Source of the DNA: Isurus oxyrinchus
Lineage: Eukaryota
Length of the DNA: 64,000 nucleotides
Direction of reading: 5' to 3'
Assembly: GCA_026770705.1 (NCBI GenBank)
Contig: JANJGN010000071.1
Span: 248,001 to 312,000 of the forward strand
The translations under genes and the position numbers were made by a program. Shown piece by piece: positions 24,905 to 64,000 of the stretch; positions within the stretch are counted from its first letter, which is position 1, and each line of letters starts with the position of its first letter. The notes under the pieces were generated by a model. That model did not search any database and was not told the origin of the DNA. It saw only the letters and a list, made by a program, of their open reading frames with translations.

Positions 24905-25293
24905 CAGAAACGTGAAGCTGGGTTACAGGGTAATAGTTATGGCTCGGACCATTGTCAAATTCTATTCTGAAATAATAAGGTCCTGCATCTTCCCGTCTGA
25001 TGTTGTTTATAATCAGGGAACAGGAGAAACTTCTTTACCCAGAGAGCCATCTTTCAGGTCTCCAGACAGCCGGGTCCGATTGTGGAACCGTGGTAACTCG
25101 TGACTGTGATCCTTGGAGTGAAAGGCAATGGGAGGCCAGAATTTGTATTTCTCATTATTTAACCAGATTCCGACTTGTCGTTTGTTTTCAAAATGTGCTG
25201 GATAACTGTAGTGACACCGAATCTGTACACACGAACCTTCCTGCGCTGTCACCTCTCGTGGAGTGTCACCTTTCCACTCTTGTGACAGTCCAA
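24905..25293 (-). pseudogene. V-set exon, unit B, frameshifted by a 22-nt insertion that replaces 2 nt
   Basis: 389 nt; reads …GDLKDGSLGKEVSPVP*; the downstream half still encodes YYFRIEFDNGPSHNYYPVTQLHVS in the original frame. Confidence 0.9.
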
Positions 25294-26185
25294 CTGGGGA
25301 GAGAAATATCAATATTTAACCCTGGATCCTCATTGTCTAAGGAATCTCTTTGGATCCTCATTGTCTAGGGGATTATTTCTGATCCAAACCCCATATTGTT
25401 GTATTGTTGATTCCGATGCAGCATTGTAGACTGACTTGTCCCCAAGCTCAGCACTGACCCTACTCCAGCAGACACTGTGAAACACACTAACAAAGCGCCT
25501 CTAGCCTGAGCTCTGCATGTGTCGAGAGAAAGACAAATATACAAACTGAATATTGACACCTTTACACACGGACAGCTTTACCTTCCTTCTCTCTTTCAGT
25601 TATCTTGCTCCCTTATTGAAGTATCTAGCAAGGTGAGAATGGACAGGAAGTGTGACACTGAACAGCCTGTCTATTCTAGGAGCTGCTGTGTTGTCTACAT
25701 GGGAAATTCTGACTAAAATCAGCAAAAGACACTAATTTCAGGCCATTGCTGTCAGAGTCCTAGCCACAAGATAGACTTCATCCCCTGAATTTTGTGTCCA
25801 ATTTTCTACTCAAACTTTCACCTCCGCACACACCCACCCCGACCCCACAAGTCACTCGCTGACCTACACTGGCTCCCAGTCCAACAACAACTCGATGTGA
25901 TTATTTTCACACTTGATTTCCAATCCCTCCATCACTCCGCTCCACTCCCTGTCTCTGTAACCTACTCAAACCTACAACCCTCTGTGATCTCTGCACTCCC
26001 CCAATTCTGCTGTCAGACAGGGAGTCAGTGTATATCAGGGAGCACAGGGGTGATGGGTGAATGGGACTTGGTATGAGTTTGTACACTGGCTCACTGCTGA
26101 ATCAGTTCCCAATCAGAGCTCAATAAGAATGATCTTTTACGAAGACTATTAACCATAAATCTATCTGAGCTGACGATGATATTAC

Positions 26186-26225
26186 CTTGGAGAAGTGACA
26201 GGAGGCAGTAATATTTCCCGATCAT
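26186..26225 (-). CDS. Leader exon CDS, unit B: MIGKYYCLLSLLQ
   Basis: ATG…CAAG|gtaat, 40 nt. Confidence 0.85.
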
Positions 26226-26674
26226 TGTCCACTCCCAGATATTTCAACAGCTTCTCACTCTCAAACTCTGAAAGAGAAAGGAGTTAATGAGACCTCACCT
26301 CTTGTCCGACAGCTCTCGAGGGATCAGAACTGCTTTTAGACAATGTCTTCACGGATTAATTTGATTCTCTGTGGGATGATAGGTGCTCTGGCGAGAGTTA
26401 CAAGGCTTGAAAAAGAAAAACAATGAAGGACTTGCATTTCTATATCGCCTTTCACCTGCTCAGGACACCCCAAAGCTCATGTCCCTGCTCTTCCCTCATC
26501 CCTTGAGCTAGAAAGATGTTCTGTACAACAGACTTGAGCCTCACACCCAGATCTCAATAATCAGTAGAAATCTTTCAAAGGCATCAATCATTGGAATCTG
26601 TCTTTATAAAGTCACAACATCAACAAAGGACAGTGTTGGTCGTGGAAGTGAATTCCAATCGTTCCGTTACTTAC

Positions 26675-26815
26675 CCAGGACCTGTCCGACTGCTCGCCTG
26701 GGGAGGAACTGCCCACACGCTCTGCTTGGGCTGAATGACCTCTTCCTGTGCTGCTCCCTCTGTGTGTTTAATTAGAAAGGGTTGATGTGTCTCTGTGAGA
26801 CAAAATGAGGAAGTA
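26675..26815 (-). promoter_or_regulatory. Exon 1 and PU.1/ETS motif, unit B
   Basis: Copy of 4266-4406; donor at 26675, GAGGAAGT at 26807-26814. Confidence 0.7.
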
Positions 26816-26989
26816 GCAAAGGAGTGAGTAAACAGGCAGTAGGAATGAGTGCTTCATACCACAAAGCGTTACAACATAATCACACTTTTGACCTATTTAT
26901 TGTGATTCTGTGATGCTTCTCTTCTGTTGTTTGCTATTTGGTAACGTCAGTTTTCTACCATGGCTCCGAGGGTTAATATTTAATTGTGC

Positions 26990-28942
26990 TGTTGCAGGGT
27001 AAATACTGAGCAAGTGCGGAACCATCAGGGGGTCAGTACTGATGGGGTGCTGCTCTGTCGCAGGATCAGGTCTGAAGAAGTGCTGCTCTGTTGGAGGGTC
27101 AGCAGCAAAGGAGTTCTGCACTGTCAGAGTATTGTTGTATTGTTCCTGAGGGCGTGCTGCACTGTCAGAGGGTCAGTACTGAGGGAGTGCTGCACTGTCA
27201 GAGGGTCAGTACTGAGGGAGTGCTGCACTGTCAGAGGGTCAGTACTGAGGGAGTGCTGCACTGTCAGAGGGTCAGTACTGAGGGAGTGCTGCACTGTCGG
27301 AGGGTCAGTACTGAGGGAGTGCTGCACTGTCAGAGGGTCAGTACTGAGGGAGTGCTGCACTGTCAGAGGGTCAGTACTGAGGGAGTGCTGCACTGTCAGA
27401 GGGTCAGTACTGAGGGAGTGCTGCACTGTCAGAAGGTCAGTACTGAGGGAGTGCTGCACTGTCAGAAGGTCAGTACTGAGGGAGTGCTGCACATTCAGAG
27501 GGTCAGTACTGAGGGAGTGCTGCACTGTCGGAGGGTTAGCACTGAGGTAGTGCTGCACTGTCAGAGGGTCAGTACAGAGGGAATGCTGCACTGTCGGAGG
27601 CTCAGTACTGAGGTAGTGCTGCACTCTTGGAGGGACAGTTCTGAGGAGTGCTGCCCTGTCGGAGGGTCAGTACTGAGGGAATGCTGCACTGTCAGAGTCT
27701 TGTTCCTGAGGGAGTGCTGCACTGTCAGAGGGACAGTACTGAGGGAGTGCTGCACTGTCAGAGGGTCAGTACTGAGGGAGTGCTGCACATTCAGAGGGTC
27801 AGTACTGAGGGAGTGCTGCACTGTCGGAGGGTACGTACTGAGGTAGTGCTGCACTGTCAGAGGGTCAGTACAGAGGGAATGCTGCACTGTCGGAGGCTCA
27901 GTACTGAGGTAGTGCTGCACTCTTGGAGGGACAGTTCTGAGGAGTGCTGCACTCTTGGAGGGACAGTTCTGAGGAGTGCTGCCCTGTCGGAGGGTCAGTA
28001 CTGAGGGAGTGCTGCACTGTCAGAGTCTTGTTCCTGAGGGAGTGCTGCACTGTCAGAGGGACAGTACTGAGGGAGTGCTGCACTGTCAGAGGGTCAGTAC
28101 TGAGGGAGTGCTGCGCTGTCAGAGGGTCAGTACTGAGGGAGTGCTGCACTGTTGGAGGGTCAGAACTGAGGTAGTGCTGCACTGTCGGAGGGTTAGTACT
28201 GAGGTAGTGCTGCACTGTCATAGGGTCAGTACTGAGGGAGTGCTGCACTGTCGGAGGGTCAGTACTGAGGGAGTGCTGCACTCTTGGTGTGTCAGTACTG
28301 AGGGAGTGCTGCACTGTCAGAGGGTCAGTATTGAGGAAGTGCTGGACACTTGGTGTGTCAATACTGAGGTAGTGTCGCACTCTTGTATGGTCAGTACTGA
28401 GGGAGTGCTGCACTGTTGGAGGGTCAGTACTGAGGGAGTGCTGCACTGTCGGAGGGTCAGTACTGAGGGAGTGCTGCACTGTCGGAGGGTCAGTACTGAG
28501 GGAGTGCTGCACTGTCAGAGTCTTGTTCCTGAGGGAGTGCTGCACTGTCAGAGGGACAGTACTGAGGGAGTGCTGCACTGTCAGAGGGTCAGTACTGAGG
28601 GAGTGCTGCACATTCAGAGGGTCAGTACTGAGGGAGTGCTGTGCTGTCAGAGGGTCAGTACTGAGGGAGTGCTGCACTGTTGGAGGGTCAGAACTGAGGG
28701 AGTGCTGCACTGTCGGAGGGTCAGTACTGAGGTAGTGCTGCACTGTCGGAGGGTCAGTACTGAGGTAGTGCTGCACTGTCGGAGGGTCAGTACTGAGGTA
28801 GTGCTGCACTGTCAGAGGGTCAGTATTGAGGAAGTGCTGGACACTTGGTGTGTCAATACTGAGGTAGTGTCGCGGTCTTGTATGGTCAGTACTGAGGGAG
28901 TGCTGCACTGTTGGAGGGTCAGTAGTGAAGGAGTGCTGCACT
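26990..28942 (+). repeat. 33-bp minisatellite (gtcagtactgagggagtgctgcactgtcagagg), ~55+ units, Deu-SINE-derived
   Basis: 11-aa periodicity in overlapping ORFs. Unit matches the recalled Deu-domain text CAGTACTGAGGGAGTGCTGCACTGTCGGAGG. Shorter arrays at ~10190, 13047, 16170, 19170, 33748, 45110 and 62062. Confidence 0.9.
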
Positions 28943-29619
28943 ATCTAAAGAACATTGTACAAGTTTCACAAAATTGCATCGAATGCCTTTGTCTCACTAA
29001 CTTCAAATTTAGAACAGGAATATTTCTCGCTGTTTCTGAGCAGCAAGGCAGCTTTGATATCACACCACCCAATGGCAGGAGTGCCTAACTACAATGTGAC
29101 ATGTTTACATGGGAAGTTTCCATTATAAAGATGGGCACAATAATTCACATGATTGGAAAATCGTCACAACATGAAGTAATGTCTTTGAGCCAAGATTTTG
29201 CAGTAAAATGAGAAATTTTATGTGTAAATATCTACAGAACAGGCTGAGCATTTTAATCACTTGTGTTAATCAATGTAATTTTATTCATAACACAAATGCT
29301 TCTTACAATCTATCGCAGCATGAAAAAGGTGCAGCATTCAGAAAGCACATTCCAATCAGAGAACAGAGTTTAGCAACGTCACATTTCTGTTCATTCCTAT
29401 TCGACCATGTTGGCTGCACACAGCCAGACAATGCCGTGGTTATGATGTGTCCACACAGCAGGACTGGGGAGCACCAGGTATAAGGAAAAGTTTCAGCTTG
29501 CTGAGGAGAAGAAGGAGAATCTCTCGTTCCAGGTTTCTCTCCGTACATTAAGAAGCAGGCATGCCGATGTTTCATTGCACTCTGTCTGCTGATGGGAGTC
29601 CGCTTGGAAATTGTTGTTT

Positions 29620-30225
29620 GTGCTGATGGAAAGAATAAGCTTTTCATAAATCGAGGGATTGAGTTCAAACACAGGGAGGTTATGCTGAACATTTATAAAG
29701 CTCTGGTTAGGTCACAACTAGAGTATTGTGTCCAGTTCTGGTCTCCTCACTTTGGGAAGGAAGTGAGTGTCCTTGAGAGGGTGGGGAGGAGATTGAGCAG
29801 AATGGGTCCTGGGATGAGGGATTTTAGCTACAAGGTTGGGTTGGAGAAGCTGGGGTTGTTCTCCTTGGAGCAAAGGAGATTGAGGGGGGATCTGATCGAG
29901 GTGTACAAGATGATGATGGGTTTAGATACGGTAGACAAAGAGAAGCTGTTGCCATTAGCTGATGGGACAAGGACTGGGGGACACAGATTGAAGGTTTTGG
30001 GCAGAGGGGGATGTGAGGAGGAACTTTTTTACACAGCGAGTGGTAATGAGCTGGAACTCGCTGCCTACGAGGATGGTGGAAGTGGAGACGAACGATTTCA
30101 AAAGGAAATTGGATGGATACTTGGAAATAAACTTGCAGAGATACGGGGATAGAGAGGGGGAATGGGACTGACTGGATTGCTCGACAGAGAGACAGCATGG
30201 ACTCAATGGGCTGAATGGTCTCCCA
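29620..30225 (+). mobile_element. CR1 LINE 3' end
   Basis: YKALVRSQLEYCVQFWSPH…LGLFSLEQRRLRGDLIEVYK. Confidence 0.9.
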
Positions 30226-30354
30226 CTGTGCTGGAATGCCTCTCTGATACGAAGGTGATTCTAACCAGGACACTGACCAGTTTCAGTACAACTTAACACA
30301 ACATCACACGTTATTTGTCTGCACTGACTGACCAGATTGTTGCTGTACAAAGCT

Positions 30355-30494
30355 TCAAACAGTCTGTCGACTTCCTTTCACTGTTTGTCTCTCCCAGACA
30401 CAGACTCCAGCGATAGTGATAACCACAGCCACAAGGAATATCACAGCTCGTATTCCCAGGATCAGGATCACGTGCAGAATCTCTCCTCCACTGT
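30355..30494 (-). CDS. Activating-type TM and short-tail terminal exon: SGGEILHVILILGIRAVIFLVAVVITIAGVCVWERQTVKGSRQTV*
   Basis: Manual translation in phase 1; ~25-aa hydrophobic span with Arg (30448-30450); polypyrimidine tract upstream. The in-phase acceptor reads CG instead of AG, so it may be a pseudo-exon. Confidence 0.78.
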
Positions 30495-31824
30495 CGAGAG
30501 AACACACAGAAAGAAATCATCACTGACTCTCCGCTTTCAATCTCTCACTCTGGCTGAACAATCAAGCTTCATATCACTGCAACATTTGCTGTAATATTGA
30601 CCCATCCACTGGGATTCAATGTGGAATGAATGTTTTCATTGTAAACACTCTAAGAGTGGACAATCGGAACTTTCCCCTTAGCGTGGAACATTGGTGAGAA
30701 TGGATCATTGTGCTGTTGGACTCCCTGTCCAATGTTTCTCTCTATTGCTGTGTACAGGATTGTGCCGTAGAAAATTCTGGAAACGTTTAGTGCCGGGTGG
30801 AAATCCATCTCGGACATGTGTGCGTATCAGGCAGGATCGAGATGGACTCCCCCACGGACTTACACCCCCCGCTTAATAAACAGTTCCAATCTTTACCCAG
30901 AGAGAGGGGAGAATGTGGAACTCACTCCCATAGGGATTGGTTGAGGTGAACAGGATCGATGTATTTAAGGGGCAGGAGGGTCGGTAACCAGAGGGACACA
31001 GATTGACGAACCGGAGGGGGAGATGAGGAGAATTTGTTTTGACAGAGCGAGTTGTTGTGATCTGGAAGGTGCTGCCTGAAAGGGCGGTGGAAGCAGATTC
31101 AATAGGAACTTTCAAAAGTGGAATTGTATAAACACTTGAAGGAGGAAGATGGGGGCAAAGTGGAGTGGTGGTTAGTGGATCTGATGGGATAGAACATTGA
31201 AAAACCTGGCACAGGCACCATGGGCTGAATGGCCTCCTCCTGTGCTGTACCATTCTCCGCTTCCATGATCTCTCCCCCAGTCAGTAACCACTCCAGATCC
31301 CTCTTGAAGTTGACAGAGAAACAGCAACCACCACACCCACTGACAGCACATTCCTGAGGATCACTACTCTCTGGGAAAAGATGAACTCCCCAACATCCAG
31401 CCTATTCCTGCTTCCCAGAGAGTGTAAACCCTTCAGGGAGGCGCTGAGGAAGTTTTCAATAAAATGACATCAAATCCACCGTTTGAGAAATAATTGAATT
31501 CCGATGAACTCACAGCTTGTGGAGCAAACTGGGAAGTAGAGTTGCTTGGAAAGCTGGGAAACACAAGGATTAAGGGCTACAATGCCACCACTGATGGGAG
31601 GCTGTAACTGCAGCGTGACGTTTACATAGGCAGTCATCATTATAAACAGGGGCATTGGACATAATGGGAATTATGTGCACGGAAATAGTGAGAACATTAT
31701 TTAAGCTTTTCACCAGCAGGAATTCTCTTCCTAAACCTCTCCAACTCTCTCTTACTCTCAGATACACAAAGAAAATCACACAGAATCAGATAAGGAAGAG
31801 TTGGGTTGGTGATTCGTCAAAGAG

Positions 31825-33510
31825 TTAGGTTTCAGGAAGCTTCTTAAAAGGAGAGAGAGAGTTGGAGACGCAGAGAGTATCTGTGAGTGCCTCTATGCAT
31901 CTGAGTGTCTGTAATAGTAATTTCCATATTCTTCCATAAATATGAATGGGAACACAAATCCCAGAATTCAGGCCAACTCTCCAGTGCAGTACTGAGGGAG
32001 TACTGACATTCCAACTGGGGAGAGAAATATCAATATTTAACTCTGGATGGTTTGTAGATCCAATAGACTCGATATCCACCCCCTCCATCACTGGGGCACA
32101 GTGGCTGCAGTGTGGACCATCTACAGGACACACAAGGATCTCCCCAAGGTTTCACAATGGATGGAAGAGAATCCTGGTCACAGGAATGGACAAGTTCATT
32201 CTACATTGGCTCATGGTCCTCAGGACCCTGTTTAGTGAAGCCAGTCTTCCACCCAACACAGTGTCTACAAGATACACAGGGAAACTGTGTAAATATCTCA
32301 TCTCTCTACACCGACTGGTTTGTCTTCGGTTTAACTTTCAGTTATTTTACTTCCTTATTGTGGTTGCTATGGTGAAACTGTGCAGGAAGTGCGAGGGCTG
32401 GACTCTCTGTCTATTCTGACTGCAGCTGTGATGTGGTCGTGGTGATTCTCAGTAAAATGAAACCCTCTGAGCTCCCCCATCCCCGAGGTTTAGGGAGTGA
32501 ATTCCAGAGCTCAGGCCCCAGGCAGCTGAAGGTCCGGCCGCCAGTATTGGAGTGATGGGAATCGGGGGATGGTCAAGAGGCCGGAATTGGAGTAACACAG
32601 AGATCTGGGACTTTGGTTGGGAGAGTTGCAGGAGCTTACAGAGATAAGGAGGCAGTGTGAGGCAATGGATGCATTTGAACAAAGAGATGTGACTTTTAAG
32701 TTTGAGATGTTGTAGGACCAGGAGACAGATAGTTTAGGGGTGATGGGTGAATGGGACTTGGTGTGAGCTTGTACACTGGCTCACTGCTGAATCGGTTCCC
32801 AATAACAGCTCAATAAGAATGATCTTTTACAAAGGCTATTAACCATAAATCTGTCCGAGCTGACGATGATATTACCTTGGAGAAGTGACAGGAGGAAGTA
32901 AGATTTTCCAATCATTATCCACTCCCAGATATTTCATCAGCTTCTCACTCTGAAACTCTGAAAGGGAAAGGAGTTAATGAGACCTCACCTCTTGTCCAAC
33001 AGCTCTCGAGAGATCAGAACTGCTTTTAGACAATGTCTTCACAGAATAATTCACAGAATAATCATCCCTGGGGGATGATAGGTGTTCTGCAGAGAGTTAC
33101 AAGGCTTTAAGAATGAAAAACAACAAAGGACTTGCATTTCTATAGCACTTTTCACCACATCAGGACACCCCAAAGTATCTACAGTTCCCTCATCCCTTGA
33201 GCTAGAAAGATGTTCTGTACAACAGACTTGAGTCTCACACCCAGATCTCAATAATCAGTGGAAATCTTTCAAAGGCATCAATCATTGGAATCTGTCTTCA
33301 TAAAGTCACAACATCAACAAAGGACGGTGTTGGTGGTGGAAGTGAATTCCAATCGTTCCGTTACTTACCCAGGACCTGTCCGACTGCTCGCCTGGGGAGG
33401 AACTGCCCACACGCTCTGCTTGGGCTGAATGACCTCTTCCTGTGCTGCTCCCTCTGTGTGTTTAATGAGAAAGGGTGGATGTGTCACTTTGAGACAAAAT
33501 GAGGAAGTTG
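31825..33510 (-). pseudogene. Unit C remnant: promoter/exon 1 (donor 33369), intact leader (32876-32915), V acceptor retained, V-D2-D3 deleted
   Basis: Only ~4 nt of V remain (32011-32014), fused to sequence homologous to the post-D3 intron at ~61830-62010. Confidence 0.82.
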
Positions 33511-34462
33511 GTTCAAAGTGACAGAGCAGCTCATGTTTTGAGATGTTGGTGAACTGTTAATCCTTTGTGTCCTGACCCTGTGTTGATATTTCTGCTCACA
33601 GGTGCACAGTCATTGACCAGGAGTTTCTCCTGTGGGTCAGTGGGTTTCACACCCGAACTCAGGGAGTCAGTATGTTTTAGAATTTTGTGGGGTTCAAGAC
33701 CCCATTCAGCAGATGCCTGCCCCACAGAGTAGACTGAAATTCCCCAGTGTCAGTACTGAGGGAGTGCTGCACTGTCAGTGGGTCAGTACTGAGGGAGTGC
33801 TACACTGTCAGAGGAACAGTACTGAGGGAGTGCAGCACTGTCGGAGGGTCAGTACTGAGGGAGTGCTACACTGTCAGAGGGACAGTACTGAGGGAGTGCT
33901 GCACTGTCAGAGGGACAGTATCGAGGGAGTGCTAATCTGTCGGAGAGACAGTTTTGAGGGAGTGTTGCACTGTCAGAGGGACAGTACTGAGGAATTGTTG
34001 CGCTGTTGGAGGGTCAGTACTGATGGAGTGCTGCACTGTCGGTGGGACAGTCCTCAGGGAGTGCCGCACTGTCGGAGGGTCAGTACTGAGGGAGTGTTGT
34101 ACTGTTGGAGGTTCAGTACTGAAAGTGCGCTGCACTGTCGGAGGGTCAGTACTGAGGGAGTGTTGTACTGTCAGAGGTTCAGTATTGAGTGAGTGCTGCA
34201 CTTTCAGAGGGTCAGTACTGAGGGAGTGCTGCACTGTCAGGGGGTGAGTACATTGAGATTCCTGCTCTGCTCTATCAGCCCCTTGGCTGGACATAAAAGC
34301 CGCTGTGTTAATGTTCAGAAACGGTTATTAATTGTATTCTGGTCACCATTTTCCCTCAAAGACAGATTATCTGATTGTCATCAGAATACCTTTCTATGGG
34401 ATCCTGCTGAGCGTAATCTTGACTGTTCCAGCGAATGTATAATGAAGGGTGTCCGTTCTTAC

Positions 34463-34759
34463 CTTGCACAGTTAGTACGAGGGTCCGCTCCGATGAAACA
34501 GATGGATATCTCACTCTGCAGCTGAGTGTGTGTCCATGGTGTTTGAGTGATGGGATCAGGGTCAGAACAGAAGTATAGGTCAGAGTGACACCATGCTGAG
34601 TTACAGTGTTTGAGACTGATCCACGTACGTCAGTGGGAGTGTCCCAGGTTAAGACAGGTGCTGCTGTTCCATTGCACGTTGTGTCGAAGGTGCAGCTTAC
34701 ATCCACAGGCTTTCCTGCAATAATTTCAGCAGGGAATATCGTGGGTTTATCTGTGAAAT
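34463..34759 (-). CDS. C2 domain-2 exon, unit D (frame intact; gene otherwise disabled)
   Basis: 297 nt, ag/gt intact, near-identical to 23293-23589; no D3 exon follows it. Confidence 0.85.
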
Positions 34760-34999
34760 CTAACAGACAGAGAATGGATCCTTTTAGAGAAATATAACGT
34801 GAAGCATCAGTTCAAATAGAAATCACAGCCCTAAGATTAGAGATAGATGGGAGTGGATGACCTGATAACATTGATGGACACATTGAATACATTTAATCAT
34901 TGATATTAAAGTGAGTATTAGAGGTTGCTTTAGGACTGAACGGATGCTATCACCCGGTTATTGAGAATCAGACTCTGCGTTATACTAAACTGTGTTTTA

Positions 35000-36046
35000 T
35001 GTTGTGATGAAACTATGATATTTTTCAGAATAATATTGTCGGCTTATGGGAATGAATGTAGATGGTTCCGTCTGCGGGTCTGATTTAATTGAATTCGAGT
35101 CAGATCAACTGTGAGGTTAAAACTATCAATAGAGTTTGGTGCAAAGCAGACTTCTGAAATGGGGATGGACAAGCTAGGATGAGGGTTCCACAGAAAAGCT
35201 GTAAATGAAATTTTAGATCAGTAAAGAGAATGTTTGATTGTCAAAGGGTAGTTGGGTGTTTATAATTAACAAGATAACCAGGGCAAGGTTATTATGTGTA
35301 TTCTTCCCAAAAGGAATGGGCCATATTGACAACATGAAAGATTTTTATACTATGGGAAAAGTGTATTTCCCAAGACAGGTGCAACAATGGGATTTTATAC
35401 ATTGGAGAGAGAGAAACCAACATAAAGAAGGATGGAATGTTATGTGGGAGGGGGACATGAATTTCTTGAAAGGTACAGTAGGTGAAGACAGGTGCTGCTG
35501 TTCCATTGCACGTTGTGTTGAAGGTGCAGCTTACATCTACACGCTTGCCTGCAATAATTTCAGCAGGGAATATCGTGGGTTGATCTGTGAAATCTAACAG
35601 ACAGGGAATGGATCCTTTTAGGTAAAACGTTTCTGTTCACTTTTGCTGCTCCAGTGCTTATAGGTGTGTTAAAAGACTTTGGAATTACACTGTCAAGTGG
35701 GTGCTGCAGTAACCTTGCCGGATTCCCATTTCCATTTAAGATTTATTGGGATTGTTGCCTTCAAGGGGGTGTGTAGTTGGAAATTAGGTTAATGAGAAAT
35801 TTTGGAATTTGTTCTAATATCAAGTAACTGTAATCTTCTGTATGTGTTTGAATGTTTCTTCTTTTGTTAATACATTTCTTAATATAATTTTAAAATATCT
35901 AAAGGTGTTAGTGGACTCAATTCTTATGCATTCACATCATAAGCCTTCTCTCAACAAATGTAAATGGCAAAACCTTTGTGGTAGCTTGGCCAAGTTCCCT
36001 TTGTGGATTCTCTCCACCTGGCACACATCACCTGCCATGTCATAAC
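35000..36046 (+). mobile_element. Solo-LTR-like element (tgttgtga…tcataaca) containing a captured D2 exon fragment
   Basis: Absent from the homologous intron of unit B (~24815); related copy inverted at ~52666-53590. Confidence 0.7.
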
Positions 36047-36132: not shown

Positions 36133-36498
36133 CAGAAACTTGAAGCTGGGTTACAGGGTAATAGTTATGGCTTGGACCATTGTCAAATTTTATTCTGAAA
36201 AAATAAGGTCCTGCATCTTCCCATCTGATGTTGTTTATAATCAGTGAACAGTCACCATCTTTCAGGTCTCCAGACAGCCGGGTCCGATGCCGGAACAGTG
36301 GTAACTCGTGACTGTGATCCTTGGAGTGAAAGGCTATAAAGAATCTTATCAGGACTTTGTCATTAAACCAGATTCCAATTTGTGGTTGGTTTTCCAGACA
36401 CGATGGATAACTGTAATGACATGGAATCTGTACACACGAATATTCCTGCGCTGTCACCTCTCATGGAGTGTCACCTTTCCACTCTTGTGACAGTCCAA
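36133..36498 (-). pseudogene. V-set exon, unit D, premature stop (CGA>TGA at 36461-36463)
   Basis: 366 nt; remainder open, with YFFRIKF. Confidence 0.9.
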
Positions 36499-37594
36499 CT
36501 GGGGAGAGAAATATCAATATTTAACTCTGGATGGTTTGTAGATCCACTAGACTCGATATCCACCCCCTCCATCACTGGGGCACAGTGGCTGCAGTGTGGA
36601 CCATCTACAGGACACACAGGGATCTCCCCAATGTATCACAATGGATAGAAGAGAATCCTGGACACAGGAGTGGACAAGTTCATTCTACATTGGCTCATAG
36701 TCCTCAGGACCCTGTTTAGTGAAGCCAGTCTTCCACCCAACACAGTGTCTACAAGATACACAGGGAAACTGTGTAAATATCTCATCTCTCTACACTGACG
36801 GTTTACCTTTCAGTTAATTCATTTCGTTATGGTGAAACTGTGCAAGAAGTGTGAGGGCTGGACCCTCTGTCTATTCTGAATGCTGCTGTGATGTAATCAT
36901 GGCCTCTCAGGGAATGGACTATTGGAGTTAATTCATCCCTGAATTTTGATTTTGAATTCCAGAGCTCGGGGCCCAGGCAGCTGAAGGCACGGCCGCCAAT
37001 AATGGAATGATGGGAATCGGGGGATGGTCAAGATGCTGGAATTGGAGGAGTGCAGAGATCTCGGAGGGTTGTAGGTACTGGAGGAGATTACAGAAATAGG
37101 GAGGGTTGTAATGGTGGACGAGGTTACAGAGAAAGGGAGGTTTGTAGGGGCTGGAGAAATTAACAGAGATAGCGAAGGATATAGGGGCTGGAGTTGGTTA
37201 AAGAGTTAGGGAGAGTGGTAGGGGCTGGAGGAGGTTACTGAGATAGGGAGGATTGTAGGAGCAGGGCAAGGTTACAGAGGTAGGGAGTAATATATGTGCT
37301 GGAAGATGTTACAGAGATAGGGAGGTTGGTATGGGCTGGAGGAGGTAACATGGATAGGGAGAGTTGCAAAATTTTGGAGGGATTTCTACAGGATGACCTG
37401 GATTTTAATTTTCTGTTGCTGTCAGACAGGGAGTCAGTGAATATCAGTGATCACAGGGGTGATGGGTGAATGGGACTTGGTGTGAGTTTGTACACTGGCT
37501 CACTGCTGAATCGGTTCCCAATCACAGCTCAATAAGAATGATCTTTTACAAAGACTATTAACCATAAATCTGTCCGAGCTGACGATGATATTAG

Positions 37595-37626
37595 CTTGGA
37601 GAACTGACAGGAGGAAGTAAGATCAT
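37595..37626 (-). pseudogene. Leader exon, unit D, disabled (8-nt deletion; donor GT>CT)
   Basis: aagat^catt versus aagatttcccgatcatt in paralogues; ttagcttgg versus ttaccttgg. Confidence 0.85.
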
Positions 37627-37745
37627 TGTCCATTCCCAGATATTTCATCAGCTTCTCACTCTCAAGCTGTGAAAGAGAAAGGAGTTAATGAGACCTCACC
37701 TCTTGTCCGACAGCTCTCCAGAGATCAGAACTGCTTTTAGACAAT

Positions 37746-38383
37746 GGGCAGAGTTTCGCTGTCGGTGAGCAGGGGGCAGGGGTGCAGTGAATTCAGCTGA
37801 GGGCCCGCCGACCTGTCAATGGCCAATTGAAGCCATTGACAGGAACATTTAAACAATGAACCGACCTGCCGGTCCAACCTTAAGGCTGGTGGGCAGGGCA
37901 GGAGCTCCAGCGACAACTAGAGAAAACATGAAACCTCATCTACCGGCGGGACGAGGATTCATGTCGGTTTTAAAAGAGTTTATTAAAGTTTTGGTGCAGT
38001 TTATTAACATGTCCCATCTTGAGTGACACTGTCACGTGAGGGGGACATGTTGAGGATTTTTTTATTTTTCTATTTTGATTGTTTGAAAACCTTTCAGCGA
38101 TCTCCCTGAGGCAGCACTTAGCCTCAGGGTGATGTGGGCTTTATCATGCGCATGTGTGACAGAGCGCACTCTCGCATTTGGGGAATGTCCCCACCACCCA
38201 GCCCCCACCCCCGGCCCACACAGGAAGGGCATAGCGCTTCCCGCTGGACATCACGCTGGGTGGGCCTTAATTGGCACGCCCACTTAAAATGGCGGCGGGG
38301 CCCGCTTCTCCGGTGGGGATTGGCTCCCCGCCCGCTGGAGATTGGGTCAGGCCCACCCGCTCGACAGGCTGGAAATTCAGCCC
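37746..38383. mobile_element. Non-autonomous DNA transposon (PIF/Harbinger-like) with 3-bp TSD AAT
   Basis: Imperfect TIRs GGGCAGAGTTTC / GAAATTCAGCCC; empty site ttagacaatgtcttcac in paralogous introns. Confidence 0.8.
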
Positions 38384-38717
38384 AATGTCTTCACAGACTA
38401 ATTTGATTCTCTGTGGGATGATAGGTGCTCTGCAGAGAGTTACAAGGCTTGAAAAAGAAAAACAATGAAAGACTTGCATTTCTATAGCACCTTTCACCAC
38501 CTCAGGACGCCCCCAAATCTCATGTCTCTGCACTTCCCTCATCCCTTGAGCTAGAAAGATGTTCTGTACAACAGACTTGAGCCTCACACCCTGATCTCAA
38601 TAATCAGTAGAAATCTTTCAAAGGCATCAATCATTGGAATCTGTCTTTATAAAGTCACAACATCAACAAAGGACGGTGTTGGTGGTGGAAGTGAATTCCA
38701 ATCGTTCCGTTACTTAC

Positions 38718-38858
38718 CCAGGACCTGTCCGACTGCTCGCCTGGGGAGGAACTGCCCATACGCTCTGCTTGGGCTGAATGACCTCTTCCTGTGCTGCTCC
38801 CTATTTGTGTTTAATTAAAAAGGGTGCATGTGTCACTGTGAGTCAAAATGAGGAAGTG
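38718..38858 (-). promoter_or_regulatory. Exon 1 and PU.1/ETS motif, unit D (with adjacent AP-1-like TGAGTCA)
   Basis: Donor at 38718; GAGGAAGTG at 38850. Confidence 0.68.
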
Positions 38859-38959
38859 CTTGGTACCAAGTGAGAAAGCAACTCTTTGCCTCGCACTGTT
38901 AGAAAACTGTTAACCCTTTGCGTGCCAATAATGTGGTTGAAGGGCCATCGACTGTTCAT

Positions 38960-45095: not shown

Positions 45096-45634
45096 GTCAC
45101 TACTTTAGTTTGCATTCCCTCGGTACTGAGCCTGCGACAGTGCAGCATTCCCTGGGTACGGACCCTCCGACTGTGCAGTGGTCCCTTAGTCATGAGCCCC
45201 TGATAGTGCAGCAGCCCCTAAGTACTGATGCTCGAAAAGTGTAGCGCTCCCTCAGCATTGACCATCTGACAGTGCAGCACTCCTTCAGCACTGGCACACC
45301 CAGAGTGCAACACTCGCAGTACAGACCCTCCGACAGTGCAGCACTAAGTCAGTGCTGACTGTCCAACAGTGCAGCACTCCCTCAGCACTGACCCTCCGAC
45401 TGTGCAGGACTCTCAGTCCTGACACCGAGTGCCGGTCTGAATTTTGCCAAATGAATTTCGAACTGACGACCTTCTCACTCAGAGAGAGAGAGGGTTCGAA
45501 ATCCAGTGACACACAGGAGAAATTCCTGGTCAATGACTTTCCACTTTTGAGCAGAAATATCATCACAAGTCCAGAACGCCAAGGGTTAACAGCTTCAAAA
45601 AACTCAAAACACGAGCTGTTCTGTCACTTTGATC

Positions 45635-45776
45635 CAACTTCCTCATTTTGTCTCACAGAGACACATCAACCCTTTCTCATTAAATACACAGAGGGAGCAG
45701 CACAGGAAGAGGTCATTCAGCCCAGGCAGAGCGTGTGGGCAGTTCCTCCCCAGGCGAGCAGTCGGACAGGTCCTGG
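45635..45776 (+). promoter_or_regulatory. PU.1/ETS motif and non-coding exon 1, unit E (opposite orientation to A-D)
   Basis: ACTTCCTC at 45637-45644; CCTGG|gtaagt donor at 45776. Confidence 0.72.
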
Positions 45777-46225
45777 GTAAGTAATGGAACGATTGGAATT
45801 CACTTCCACGACCAACACAGTCCTTTGTTGATGTTGTGACTTTATAAAGACAAATTCCAATGATTGATGCCTTTGAAAGATTTCTACTGATATTGAGATC
45901 TGGGTGTGAGGCTCAAGTCTGTTGTACAGAACATCTTTCTAGCTCAAGGGATGAGGGAAGTGCAGGGACATGAGCTTTGGGACATCCTGAGGTGCTGAAA
46001 TACGATATAGAAATGCAAGTCCTTCATTGATTTATTTTTTTAAAGCTTTTTAACTCTCTGCAGAGCACCTATCATCCCACAGAGAACCAAATTAGTCTGT
46101 GTAGACAATGTGTAAAAGCAGTTCTGATCTCTCGAGAGCTGTCGGACAAGAGGTGAGGTCTCATTAACTCCTTTCTCTTTCACAGTTTGAGAGTCAGAAG
46201 CTAAAGGAATATCTGGGAGTGGACA

Positions 46226-46265
46226 ATGATCGGGAAATCCTACTTCCTCCTGTCACTTCTCCAAG
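46226..46265 (+). CDS. Leader exon CDS, unit E: MIGKSYFLLSLLQ
   Basis: gacaATG…CAAG|gtaat; acceptor at ~46185. Confidence 0.88.
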
Positions 46266-47299
46266 GTAATATCATCGTCAACTTGGACAGACTTATGGCT
46301 AATAGTCTTTGTAAAAGATCATTCTTATTGAGCTGTGATAGGGAACTGATTCAGCAGTGAGCCAGTGTACAAACTCACACCAAGTCCCATTCACCCATCA
46401 CCCCTGTGCTCACTGATATACACTGACTCCCTGTCTGACAGCAGAACTGCAGGACAGCAGAGACCTCAAAGGGTTTCAGGGCTGGAGGAGGTGACAGTGA
46501 TAGGGAGTGGAGAGGGAGGATGGAGGGATAAGGAATCAATGAAGAGATTTTGAAAATTGAGTCATTGCTGGACTGGGAGCCAGTGTAGGTCAGCGAGTGA
46601 CAGGGGAGCGATCGGCTGAATAGAGAAGCAGGGATAAAAACTGGGGGATGAAGTCTATCCTGATGCAAGCACTCCGATATCAATGCCCTGAAATGTTTCT
46701 CTCTTGCTGATTTTCATCAGAATTTCCCATGAAGACAACACAGAAGCTCTTAGATTAGACAGGCAGTTCAGCGTCACACTTCCTGTCCATTCTCACCATG
46801 CTAGAAAATTCGATAAGATAGCAAGATAACTGATAGAGAGAAGGGAGGCAAAGCTGTCTGTATGTAAAACTGTCAAATATTCTGAGTTATCATGATTGTT
46901 TCTGATCTGCTGCAGAGTTTATATTTCATTGAAACTTATTACTTTGCAGCTCAGAGAGAGACCATTGACTCACTGCCTGAAAGGGCGGTGGAAGCAGATT
47001 CAACAGGAACTTTCAGAAGGGGAACTGGATAAATACTTGAAGGGGAAATTTTGCAGGGTTGTGGAGGAAAGAGCAGAGGTGAGAGTGGGAATAATTGGAC
47101 AGATCTTTCAACGGCCCAGCACAGGCTCGATGGGCCAAATGTCTTCCTTCTGTTCCGGATCATTCTACAATCCGATAAATTAAGTCCCTTTTCAATAACT
47201 CTCCAGGCTCCTGCTGCAGGAATGGATCTTTCAGAAGGGCAGGGAGCAAGCGGTTTCTCATATCATGTTCATATTTATTGACAATTACATAAGTGCATG

Positions 47300-61654: not shown

Positions 61655-62061
61655 GTTAGTTAAGGCAAACTTCAACATCTCTCTCAGATTGAAACACTAC
61701 AAAAACACACATAAATACCCAGCCTTAAATAGACACCTGCAGACAAACAATCCCACATCTATGAGCACACACAAAGACACACTCACAAACAAACACACTA
61801 GCACATACTCCCCTGTGGATTACCTGACCTCCCTCAGTGCTGCACCGGAGAGTTGACCTGGATTCTGGGATTTGTGTTCCCTTTCATATTTATGGAAGAA
61901 TATGGAAATTGCAAAGTCTATTACAGACACTCAGATGCACAGAGATACTCACAGATACTCTCTGCCTCTCCAACTCTCTATCCTACTTTAAGAACCTTCC
62001 TGAAATCTAACACAGGCATCAGATGAAATTTTGTGCAATTTGTACAATGTTCTTTAGACAG

Positions 62062-62541
62062 CACAGCACTCCCTCAGTTCAAACCCTCCAACAGCGCAGC
62101 ACTCCCTCAGATCAGACCCTCCGACAGTGCAGCACTTCCTCAGTTCAAACCCTCCGACAGTGCAGCTCTCCCTCAGTTCATACCCTCCGACAGTGCAGCA
62201 CTCCCTCAGTTCAAACCCTCCGACAGTGCAGCACTCCCTCAGTTCAGAGCCTCCGAAAGTGCAGCATTCCCTCAGTTCAGACCCTCTGACAGTGCAACAC
62301 TCCCTCAGCTCAGACCCTCCGACAGTGCCGCACTACCTCAGCTCAGACCCTCCGACAGTGCAGCACTCCCTCAGTTCAGACCCTCCGACAGTGCAGCACT
62401 CCCTCAGCTCAGACCCTCCGACAGTGCAGCACTCCCTCAGCTCAGACCCTCCGACAGTGCAGCACTCCCTCAGTTCAGACCCTCCGACAGTGCAGCACTC
62501 CCTCAGTACTGAACCTCCGACAGTGCCGCACTACCTCAGTT
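62062..62541 (-). repeat. 33-bp Deu-derived minisatellite variant (ttcaga/ctcaga in place of tactga)
   Basis: 11-aa periodicity SDSAALPQFRP. Confidence 0.88.
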
Positions 62542-64000
62542 CTTCTCTGCCGATGCTGCCAGACCTGCTGAGTTTTTCCAGGTATTTCTGTTTCTGTTTC
62601 TGTTTTGAATTTCCAGCATCTGCAGTTTTTTTGCTTTTAGTGCTGGGCAGTTCCTCAGCAAGGATTCAGGCCACAAAACATTGCGAGTGCTGTGGGTCTG
62701 CGCCACGATTTAGAGAGCTGTGCTTGGCACGCCTATTCTAGTCCCAGTCCAGTGTGGTGGGGAGAGCCTGGCAGTCCTGGGTTGGTCGTGCCCAGCATGG
62801 TTTGCAGGACGTGGTCAGTCCCTCACACACGTCGGTCCTGGGGGTGGGTGGCTTGATACTAGGCCGCAGGTGGCACAATCCCAGTCAGGGGAGGCATCTG
62901 CAGCCGGTCAATGGGGAGCAGGTAATATAGAGAGTAGGGGTGGGGCTGGGAATCGAGGGGGGCCGGTGGTCTCTGTAAGTCACAGTACAATGGGCCTCTA
63001 GTTGGAGAGAGGTCAGGTCTACATGGGGCATTGGGATGTCAACATCAGACAGTCTAGGGAGGAGGACTGGGATGTCAACCCCCAACACAATAAGATCAAG
63101 GATTAGAGAGGAAGGGAGGAGACTGATTGGAAGGAGGGGAATGTGCACATTATGCTCCTCCAGCACGATGGGAGGGACTGTGATGGTTACGGGGGTGGGG
63201 GGGGTGACGTGTGAGGGGATAGACGCTTACCTGGTGGTATTGCCTCAGCCCCACCCTTTTTCAAGCTGATCCAATGTCGCAGTTGAAGAATAAGCTACAA
63301 AACAAATTGGCAGGGGAGGTCTCCCAGGGCCTGTGGGAGACATCACCCACTGCATCTTCGGCCTGTTTGAAGGGGCACCCGAACAATTCCGGCTTTTCCA
63401 AATGATGAGGAAGACACAGCTGCACCCCGAGTCCCCTACTGGGGATCCAGAAGGTTGCAATAGCGCTGCGAGGGACTCATGGGCTCCACAGTGACTCCCT
63501 AATTAGCGACTGGAAGGTTTATGTTCATTTATCTTTATTATCCGTTCATATTGAGCAATGGAGCTCCTGATTTGTCACCTTCCTGTACCTCGTCCAATGC
63601 TTCTGTTATCAGGACTTCCACATCGATGTGAAAGAGCCATGATGATAGCAGACAGTCGCACAATGGGAATGGCACTAGGCCAGTGAAGCAGAGGCCCAGG
63701 TGAATGCTTTGAAGACACGGGTTCAAATCCCACCACGGCAGCTGGAGGAATTTCAATTCGATTAATCAATAAATTTAATTGATTGATACATTTTTTTCTT
63801 ATTCATTTCAGGGATGTTGGTGTCGCTGACTAGGCCAGTATTTGTTGCCCATCCCCATTTGCCTTTGAGAACATCTGGATATCTGAGTTAGGATCAGGAG
63901 TAGGTCACTCAGCCCCTCGAACCTGCTCCGCCATTCAGTAAGATCATGGCTGATCTGATTGTCACCTCAACCTCACATTCCTGCCTACCCCCAATGACCT

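What the first reader, a model, noticed from the sequence alone, without database searches (positions are those of the whole stretch)
30355..30494. Hidden activating-type TM exon (Arg in TM, 12-aa Tyr-free tail): evidence for paired Siglec-like receptors
This frame is not in the ORF track: ILHVILILGIRAVIFLVAVVITIAGVCVW-ERQTVKGSRQTV*. A basic TM residue plus a short tail is the established signature of DAP12/FcRgamma-coupled receptors (Siglec-14 uses Arg). It lies downstream of the unit C leader and post-D3 intron, so the same ectodomain family was coupled to both long Tyr tails and adaptor-type ends. The phase-1 acceptor reads ctctCG, so this copy is probably dead; live paralogues are predicted elsewhere.
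Basis: partly seen in the sequence, partly recalled or inferred. Interest (0 to 1): 0.8.

Follow-up and report, generated by a model that had tools for sequence, protein, structure and literature searches.

The report
Decayed copy of shark activating-receptor membrane exon
This is a real copy of a conserved shark exon that gives Siglec-type immune receptors a membrane anchor with a buried arginine and almost no tail, but the copy here sits in a broken, rearranged gene and has lost its splice signal, so it is an ordinary relic of a family already present in public annotation.

Summary
A minus-strand frame at 30355-30494 encodes the hydrophobic stretch with one Arg and a 12-residue Tyr-free tail.

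It is not chance. It matches the C-terminal ends of predicted shark Siglec/CD33-like, CD22-like and SLAM-like proteins (best E 7e-14, 84% identity). The motif ILGIRA.IF is invariant in 10 of 10 aligned rows.

Contigs of runs guessed to be RNA, from two organisms, join a C2 (D2) exon at 34463 to exactly 30494. They stop at 30333, where a donor lies. So the exon is 30333-30494 and is the last coding exon, not the last exon.

The only contig that spans it reads T at 30496, which gives AG, and it differs in its flanks.

The surrounding gene is wrecked:
- The exon's own unit has lost its V-to-D3 exons by a deletion.
- The unit upstream has a frameshifted leader, a lost donor and a stop in V.

Verdict: a genuine but most likely dead family member, with a live near-identical copy or haplotype elsewhere. 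Adaptor coupling is inferred, not tested. This scan has noted the same exon type before on other DNA of this genome.

The parts
30333..30494 (-). Arg-containing transmembrane plus short-tail exon, the last coding exon. Coding part 30358-30494, stop codon 30355-30357, then 22 nt of 3' UTR.
   Evidence: Frame. Homology: (E 7.2e-14). Both ends fixed by contig pieces 30333-30494 in X2 (0 other letters) and X6 (2 other letters, 1 gap).
30495..30496 (-). Acceptor position of the exon. It reads CG in the window instead of AG.
   Evidence: sequence. table 3: the one contig that spans it (X1 record 3) reads T at 30496 on the + strand, which is AG on the minus strand. The joint 30494->34463 fixes the exon start.
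30491..30492 (-). Next AG, 4 nt inside the exon. Its use would shift the frame and give a stop after 7 codons.
30331..30332 (-). GT of a donor (ctg|gtcagt) 22 nt after the stop codon.
   Evidence: sequence. X2 record 17 and X6 record 24 stop fitting at 30333 while the records run on for 390 and 55 letters.
31824..32000 (-). Relic of the intron that follows the D3 exon.
   Evidence: 87% to 61829-62011 (reverse), which lies just after the plus-strand D3. alignment.
32004..32016 (-). V-exon acceptor plus the first ~11 nt of a V exon, then the deletion breakpoint.
   Evidence: alignment; 32004-32652 = 36488-37104, 84%.
32876..32915 (-). Intact leader (signal peptide) exon of unit C, with a phase-1 donor G|GTAATA.
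32736..33654 (-). 5'-flank repeat that stands upstream of every unit in the window and contains the leader. It marks unit C as a separate gene unit.
   Evidence: 88-93% to 3654-4427, 26046-26814, 37455-38923 and 45492-46405.
33745..34270 (.). 33-nt satellite array between unit B's D2 and unit C's 5' flank.
34463..34760 (-). D2 (C2-set) exon of unit B. It is open, with donor G|GTAAGA in phase 1. In contigs its counterpart is joined to the Arg exon.
   Evidence: C2-set_2, E 2.8e-09; pieces 34463-34760 with 5 (X2) and 8 (X6) other letters.
35436..35621 (-). Partial second copy of the D2 exon; the frame runs out of D2 after about 45 residues.
36133..36498 (-). V exon of unit B, with an in-frame TGA at 36461-36463. 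Unit A has CGA there.
   Evidence: V-set 1.2e-08, Ig_CD22 1.9e-07.
37595..37626 (-). Leader exon of unit B (approximate limits), with an 8-nt deletion that shifts the frame and a donor changed from GT to CT.
   Evidence: alignment. (the frame stops after 11 codons).
29592..30152 (+). Fragment of a retrotransposon ORF on the opposite strand, directly downstream of the exon.
   Evidence: 186-codon ORF. That it is LINE/RT-like is my own reading of the peptide, not a family scan.
29063..29477 (-). 3' flank shared with unit A (8730-9149, 73%). In unit A this lies beyond the last poly(A) signal.

Best explanation
The stretch is a genuine copy of a conserved shark exon. That exon ends Ig-superfamily receptors (Siglec/CD33-like, CD22-like, SLAM-like) with a membrane span holding one arginine about a third of the way in from the outside, followed by a 12-residue tail without tyrosine.

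In live genes the exon is spliced in phase 1 behind the last Ig exon. The receptor made this way cannot signal by itself. By inference, it is held at the surface and made to signal by pairing its arginine with the paired aspartates of a dimeric ITAM adaptor. The position of the arginine fits the zeta/FcR-gamma kind better than the DAP12 kind.

The copy in this window is most likely dead:
- Its acceptor reads CG.
- Its own unit lost the V-to-D3 exons through a deletion that fused the start of V to the post-D3 intron.
- The V-D2 unit upstream, the only one that could supply an ectodomain, has a frameshifted leader, a lost leader donor and a stop codon in V.

A near-identical copy or haplotype with an AG acceptor is expressed as V-D2-TM(Arg).

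Shown: homology, exon limits, the joint, the lesions. Inferred: adaptor pairing, and that the transcripts come from another copy.
For: Homology:
- One search gave 10 hits at E<=1e-3, the best 7.2e-14 at 84% identity.
- In 8 of the 9 examined the match is the C-terminus of an Ig-domain protein.
- ILGIRA.IF is invariant in 10 of 10 rows.

Exon limits and splicing:
- One search shows the joint 30494->34463 in X1, X2 and X6, 1 contig each, and none in X15.
- The exon piece has 0 other letters in X2.
- The split codon is in frame.

Acceptor:
- CG in the window.
- T at 30496 in the only spanning contig. That contig shows no other listed difference over 30442-30723, and every other listed one lies in 30724-31085 (23 in all over its 644 nt; not all are listed). 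The flanks therefore look diverged.
- X1 record 2 has 16 other letters over 30184-30471. All 6 that are listed lie at 30224-30320.

Lesions:
- deletion in unit C.
- unit B leader.
- stop in the unit B V exon.

Arg position: residue 15 of the exon peptide, about the 11th of a ~29-residue hydrophobic run.

Adaptor rule, from PMC13107469 (passages read): DAP12 partners have a central Lys, and Arg in the top half goes with zeta/gamma.
Against: - The coding part of the exon is flawless and identical to the expressed form over 162 nt, so any decay is very recent.
- The G at 30496 is seen only in the assembly. None of the four runs laid shows it, and X15, the likely DNA run, does not cover the place. 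It could be an assembly error or a private allele.
- The D2 in the contigs is 98% identical to unit B's, far closer than unit A's D2 (90%). D2 and the exon also stand in the window in the right order. The transcripts could therefore come from this very locus in other individuals.
- 'RNA' is a guess for X1, X2 and X6.
- No adaptor was examined. Akula et al. 2014 (PMC4016189, passages read) found no FcR-gamma homologue in the shark genomes then available.
Confidence: 0.75

Rival explanations
1. The joined contigs come from this very locus. Units B and C together form one transcribed gene (V, D2, a 3968-nt intron full of relics, then the TM exon). The CG is either an assembly error or one allele of a polymorphism, so in other haplotypes the acceptor, and perhaps the whole gene, works.
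For: -: the exon piece is identical (0 of 162 letters differ in X2), and D2 differs at 5 of 298 letters.
- No run shows G at 30496.
- The spanning contig shows no listed difference other than 30496 over 30442-30723.
- D2 and the exon stand in the window in the order and orientation of the joint.
Against: - The spanning contig has 23 other letters over its 644 nt; apart from 30496, every listed one lies beyond 30724. The read-through contig has 16 other letters in 288 nt, and all 6 listed lie below 30321. That is too many for ordinary alleles.
- The same number of D2 differences (5) appears in two studies of organism A (X1 record 8, X2 record 17), which suggests a fixed difference.
- Unit B's leader frameshift, lost donor and V stop would still make the window's version non-coding.
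- Earlier notes of this scan place many more copies of the exon on this chromosome (leads only).
Confidence: 0.2
2. With the true acceptor lost, the AG 4 nt downstream is used. The locus would then make a frameshifted, anchorless (soluble) V-D2 product ending after 7 new residues.
For:: the pyrimidine tract is intact and the next AG is at 30492-30491; the shifted frame stops after 7 codons.
Against: - No joint to 30490 is among the 15 joints listed (95 more were not shown).
- The upstream leader and V are broken, so no secreted protein could be made from the window's sequence.
Confidence: 0.04
3. A chance open frame in repeat-rich non-coding DNA.
For: - The region is full of transposon fragments and satellites.
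- The frame is only about 50 codons long.
- It has no second copy in the window.
Against: -: E 7.2e-14 against 1.84 billion proteins.
- The match falls at the C-terminus in 8 of 9 hits examined.
- The motif is invariant.
- Contigs end exactly at its splice sites.
Confidence: 0.01

Closest known systems
RefSeq models of other sharks that end in the same exon: XP_072325011.1 (CD33-like, Scyliorhinus torazame), XP_072326180.1 (Siglec-12, S. torazame), XP_072409577.1 (Siglec-13, Chiloscyllium punctatum). Names.
   Same: - Same TM and tail: 80-84% identity, the same ILGIRA.IF core, and in the two S. torazame proteins the same last seven residues.
- Same position behind a D2 or D3 Ig exon with a split codon.
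- The V-D2-TM layout of XP_072325011.1 equals the layout of the joined contigs.
   Different: The copy here has CG at the acceptor and no usable ectodomain exons in its own unit. Those entries are automatic predictions; I saw no experiment on them.
Human paired Siglecs: Siglec-5/Siglec-14 and Siglec-11/Siglec-16. PMC4042635 and PMC5701461, abstracts seen in the listing.
   Same: - Near-identical ectodomains are coupled either to a Tyr-bearing tail or to a charged TM with a short tail.
- Gene conversion occurs between partners, and non-functional versions take part (abstract of PMC5701461).
- Here an identical ~400-nt core between diverged flanks suggests conversion (inference).
   Different: - No orthology is claimed. 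The shark exon also ends CD22-like and SLAM-like proteins, so it behaves as a shared cassette.
- The Arg lies in the upper third of the span.
- The adaptor is unknown.
FcR-gamma/zeta-coupled receptors with an Arg in the top half of the TM: NKp30, NKp46, CD89 (PMC13107469, passages read) and PIR-A (PMC2213385, abstract in the listing).
   Same: A single Arg in the outer part of the span and a short tail without motifs.
   Different: Association is untested. FcR-gamma was reported as not found in sharks in 2014 (PMC4016189). I could not check newer genomes.

Membership tests
Shark Arg-TM/short-tail last-coding-exon family (as in XP_072325011.1) | Significant sequence similarity over the whole exon peptide | tested here: met
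   E 7.2e-14, 84% identity over residues 1-45. 7 proteins score below 1e-5.
Shark Arg-TM/short-tail last-coding-exon family (as in XP_072325011.1) | Invariant core ILGIRA.IF with the single Arg | tested here: met
   invariant in 10 of 10 rows (the window plus 9 proteins).
Shark Arg-TM/short-tail last-coding-exon family (as in XP_072325011.1) | Stop codon 8-12 residues after the span; the match is the protein's C-terminus | tested here: met
   C-terminal in 8 of 9 proteins examined; in P0010 it is internal. The window has a 12-residue tail and then TGA.
Shark Arg-TM/short-tail last-coding-exon family (as in XP_072325011.1) | Canonical AG acceptor in phase 1 before the exon | tested here: not met
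   CG at 30496-30495. A near-identical contig has AG. The sequence belongs to the family, but as a damaged copy.
Shark Arg-TM/short-tail last-coding-exon family (as in XP_072325011.1) | Spliced to an Ig exon in RNA | tested here: inconclusive
   the joint 34463|30494 appears in 3 of 4 runs laid. The runs are only guessed to be RNA, and the contigs may come from another copy.
Siglec (sialic-acid-binding Ig-like lectin) genes, for the gene units around the exon | N-terminal V-set domain of the Siglec/CD22 type followed by C2-set domains | tested here: met
   unit B V exon V-set 1.2e-08 and Ig_CD22 1.9e-07; D2 C2-set_2 2.8e-09. One search gives the same for P0001-P0003.
Siglec (sialic-acid-binding Ig-like lectin) genes, for the gene units around the exon | Conserved ligand-binding Arg on the F strand and actual sialic-acid binding | not testable with these tools
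   An Arg stands in the FFRI stretch of unit B's V exon. That this is the essential Arg is my reading from recall. Binding needs an experiment.
Activating receptors coupled to ITAM adaptors (DAP12, FcR-gamma, zeta) | One basic residue inside the membrane span and a short tail without signalling motifs | tested here: met
   one Arg in a ~29-residue hydrophobic run; 12-residue tail without Tyr.
Activating receptors coupled to ITAM adaptors (DAP12, FcR-gamma, zeta) | DAP12 type: a centrally placed Lys (rule as stated in PMC13107469) | tested here: not met
   The residue is Arg and lies about a third of the way in. The rule was read. By recall, Siglec-14 is an Arg exception.
Activating receptors coupled to ITAM adaptors (DAP12, FcR-gamma, zeta) | Zeta/gamma type: Arg in the top half of the span | tested here: met
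   (position) against the rule read.
Activating receptors coupled to ITAM adaptors (DAP12, FcR-gamma, zeta) | Physical association with the adaptor, and adaptor-dependent surface expression | not testable with these tools
   Needs co-expression and co-precipitation. I did not test whether the adaptor genes exist in this genome, because no query sequence was allowed from memory.
Paired inhibitory/activating receptors | Closely similar ectodomains on a Tyr-tailed and on a charged-TM partner in one species | tested here: met
   D2 of unit A (uncharged TM plus Tyr tails) is 90.6% identical to D2 of unit B; a D2 98% identical to unit B's is joined to the Arg exon.
Paired inhibitory/activating receptors | Both partners expressed in the same cells and binding the same ligand | not testable with these tools
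   No expression or binding data are at hand.

The most novel reading that the evidence does not exclude
The window may hold the rearrangement that makes a new receptor layout. A deletion with its breakpoint at 32000-32014, where both parent sequences share a TGGA, removed V to D3 of an Arg-ended three-domain unit. This brought its Arg exon within splicing reach of the V-D2 unit upstream. Exactly that D2-to-Arg-exon splice, across this 3968-nt interval, is what the contigs of two shark species show.

If the expressed gene has the same relic-filled intron, the two-domain activating receptor was born by this unequal event and then duplicated or kept as divergent haplotypes. The copy here would then be a null version. 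That would parallel the non-functional versions of human activating Siglecs, with an identical ~400-nt core kept alike by gene conversion.
Probability: 0.25. Interest if true: 0.45.

Novelty: new member of a known kind. Interest (0 to 1): 0.25.

Why it matters
As a family, the exon shows that cartilaginous fish build activating partners of Siglec-type inhibitory receptors in the same way as mammals, and that they reuse one membrane cassette on several ectodomain families. That pushes the paired-receptor design back to the base of jawed vertebrates.

It also raises the question of which adaptor sharks use. One 2014 survey found no FcR-gamma in them (PMC4016189).

I found no paper on this in six searches:
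- nothing on shark activating Siglecs;
- nothing on the adaptor in cartilaginous fish beyond that survey.

The proteins do stand in RefSeq.

This particular copy adds little. It is a decayed member, useful mainly as an example of how the cluster turns over through deletion, satellite-flanked units and probable gene conversion.

Tried and rejected
- **Second copy in the window.** I looked with tblastn and blastn and found none.

- **Chance ORF.** Considered and rejected.

- **The AG at 30492-91 as the true acceptor.** Rejected. It gives phase 2 and, behind a phase-1 Ig exon, a stop after 7 codons. The proteins and the joint both place the start at 30494.

- **The exon as the gene's last exon.** Rejected, because contigs leave the window sequence at a donor at 30333.

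- **The downstream 3'-UTR exon.** I looked for it at 29063-29477. That stretch is homologous to DNA beyond unit A's poly(A) signal, so it is shared 3' flank and not shown to be an exon. This stays open.

- **Genomic DNA of the paralogues.** The comparison therefore rests on one contig of one run.

- **Literature.** Six searches gave no paper on shark activating Siglecs or on DAP12 or FcR-gamma in sharks beyond PMC4016189. PMC4536121 holds none of my four shark terms.

- **Supplements.** Closed, and I did not ask for them. I know of none that bears on the claims.

- **Earlier notes.** Three look-ups found nothing.

Full report
**What is there.**
The mean hydropathy of the best 19-residue window is 2.95. 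Only 4 of 662 stop-free stretches of 45 or more codons in the window reach 2.5. The frame has no second copy in the window.

**It is a known kind of exon.**
I searched the exon's 45-residue peptide alone, with no joined model, by phmmer against 1.84 billion representative proteins. This gave 10 proteins at E<=1e-3, 2 of them at E<=1e-10, the best at 7.2e-14 and 84% identity. I examined 9 of the 10. P0008 was left out because it is repetitive and matches only residues 22-39.

- In 8 of the 9 the match is the C-terminal end of the protein. In P0010 it is internal, in a model that runs on into a D2 exon.
- All 9 carry Ig-type Pfam domains. 4 of the 9 have V-set plus Ig_CD22 matches.
- The sources call them CD33-like and Siglec-12 (Scyliorhinus torazame), Siglec-13 and CD22-like (Chiloscyllium punctatum), CD22-like (Hemiscyllium ocellatum), sialoadhesin-like (Rhincodon typus), Siglec-11 (C. 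plagiosum) and SLAM family member 9-like (Mustelus asterias). One is a hypothetical protein.
- Aligned with the window, the core ILGIRA.IF is invariant in 10 of 10 rows. The two S. torazame proteins share the window's last seven residues.

So the exon type ends several ectodomain families in at least two shark orders (the ordinal placement is from my own knowledge). It is already in public automatic annotation.

**Exon limits and the acceptor.**
In the proteins, the residue before the conserved Ser-Gly/Arg-Gly start varies (D, L, Y, N). That is what a phase-1 split codon gives. In the window this puts the exon start at 30494, where the two preceding bases read CG, not AG. The pyrimidine tract is intact. 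The next AG (30492-91) would shift the frame and give a stop after 7 codons.

**Reads.**
I laid Logan contigs of four runs on 30000-35999 at 85% likeness or more. X1 and X2 are organism A from two studies, X6 is organism B and X15 is organism C. 'RNA' is a guess for the first three.

- A joint from 30494 to 34463, skipping 3968 nt, stands in one contig each of X1, X2 and X6, and in none of X15.
- 34463 is the last base of unit B's D2 exon, before G|GTAAGA. The split codon is in frame.
- In X2 the 850-nt contig fits 30333-30494 with 0 other letters and 34463-34760 with 5. In X6 the figures are 2 (plus 1 gap) and 8.
- Both contigs stop fitting at 30333 while they run on for 390 and 55 letters. 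The minus strand there reads ctg|gtcagt. So the exon is 30333-30494, and a further untranslated exon follows which I could not place.
- X1 also holds a read-through contig (30184-30471, 16 other letters; all 6 listed ones lie at 30224-30320).
- X1 also holds an unspliced contig (30442-31085, 23 other letters). It reads T at 30496, which is AG on the coding strand. No other difference is listed for it over 30442-30723; all the other listed ones lie beyond 30724 (not all 23 are listed).
- No run shows the window's G at 30496. X15 does not cover the place.

My reading is that a copy with the same ~400-nt core but diverged flanks (a paralogue or a very different haplotype) has the AG and is expressed as V-D2-TM(Arg). 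That is the layout of XP_072325011.1. The identical core between diverged flanks suggests gene conversion; this is inference.

**The locus.**
Every unit in the window starts with the same 5'-flank repeat that holds a leader exon.

- *Unit C.* It has that flank (32736-33654) and an intact leader (32876-32915). It also has the leader-V intron, the V acceptor and about 11 nt of V. It then continues as the sequence that follows D3 in the plus-strand unit (31824-32000 = 61829-62011). Its V, D2 and D3 exons were therefore deleted. About 1.3 kb further on stands the Arg exon. After that come a transposon fragment on the other strand and a 3' flank shared with unit A.
- *Unit B.* It lies upstream (V 36133-36498, a partial D2 copy, D2 34463-34760) and ends at a satellite. 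Its leader has an 8-nt deletion and a GT-to-CT donor change. Its V has TGA where unit A has CGA.

From the window's sequence, then, no receptor can be made. The exon's own unit has no ectodomain, the only upstream ectodomain is broken at three places, and the acceptor is gone.

**How the live form most likely works (inferred).**
A single Arg in the span and a tail without motifs are the marks of receptors that need an ITAM adaptor with paired Asp in its span. A 2026 review (PMC13107469, passages read) states two rules:
- Known DAP12 partners have a central Lys.
- An Arg in the top half goes with zeta/gamma.

Here the Arg is about the 11th of ~29 hydrophobic residues, which favours the zeta/gamma kind. 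Against this, a 2014 survey found no FcR-gamma in shark genomes (PMC4016189, passages read). The adaptor stays open.

**Both ends on one ectodomain family.**
Unit A's D2 is 90.6% identical in protein to unit B's. Unit A goes on to an uncharged TM and three Tyr-bearing tail cassettes. A D2 98% identical to unit B's is joined to the Arg exon. P0002's D3 domains are 79-81% identical to unit A's D3.

**Novelty.**
Six literature searches found no paper on shark activating Siglecs or their adaptors. RefSeq holds the proteins, and earlier notes of this scan describe the same exon type at many other places of this genome. I treated those notes as leads and tested their claims. This copy is a new, decayed member of a known kind.

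**Limits.**
- All runs were contigs, so they give no strand, level or ends.
- The AG-versus-CG comparison rests on one contig.

Noticed in passing
window 32876-32937 (minus); the same exon near 26.2 kb, 3.8 kb and 46.2 kb: The leader exon carries two overlapping ATG frames. The downstream one gives the hydrophobic signal peptide. The upstream one (starting MKYLG) equals the predicted N-termini of the CD22-like models P0004 and P0005, which also end in the Arg exon. These families may therefore share a first exon as well as the last coding exon, or the models start at the wrong ATG.
   Followed up: partly
window 33745-34270, 26989-28945, 62057-62577, 13040-13335 and others: 33-nt satellite arrays stand between the gene units and inside the tail cassettes. 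In X6 the summed contig depth on 33600-34399 is 335,000-690,000, against tens to thousands elsewhere. The satellite is therefore hugely represented in that run, either transcribed or as DNA.
   Followed up: no
window 30184-30471: In X1 a contig that reads through the donor at 30333 has depth 547, against 400 for the contig with the D2 joint. Contig depths are poor measures, but a read-through 3' end may be a major form.
   Followed up: no
window 35436-35621 (minus): A partial second copy of the D2 exon lies in the V-D2 intron of unit B. It is 69% identical over 62 residues and then leaves the D2 frame.
   Followed up: no
P0010 (XP_043539248.1, Chiloscyllium plagiosum): This RefSeq model runs from a D3 end through the Arg membrane span straight into a D2 exon and further domains. 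It looks like two neighbouring genes merged, or a mis-spliced prediction.
   Followed up: no
window 29063-29477 and 8730-9149: The DNA after the Arg exon and the DNA after unit A's last Tyr-tail cassette are homologous (73%). Units with either kind of end therefore share the same 3' boundary. Part of the stretch between unit A's last tail and that flank is masked (N 9424-9610) and was left alone.
   Followed up: partly
window 24839-25294 (minus): Unit A's V exon loses its frame about two thirds of the way in.
   Followed up: partly
window 32004, run X15: A contig of X15 continues leftwards from 32004 with the start of an intact V exon, where the window has the deletion (loose ends). An undeleted relative of unit C therefore exists in organism C.
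   Followed up: no
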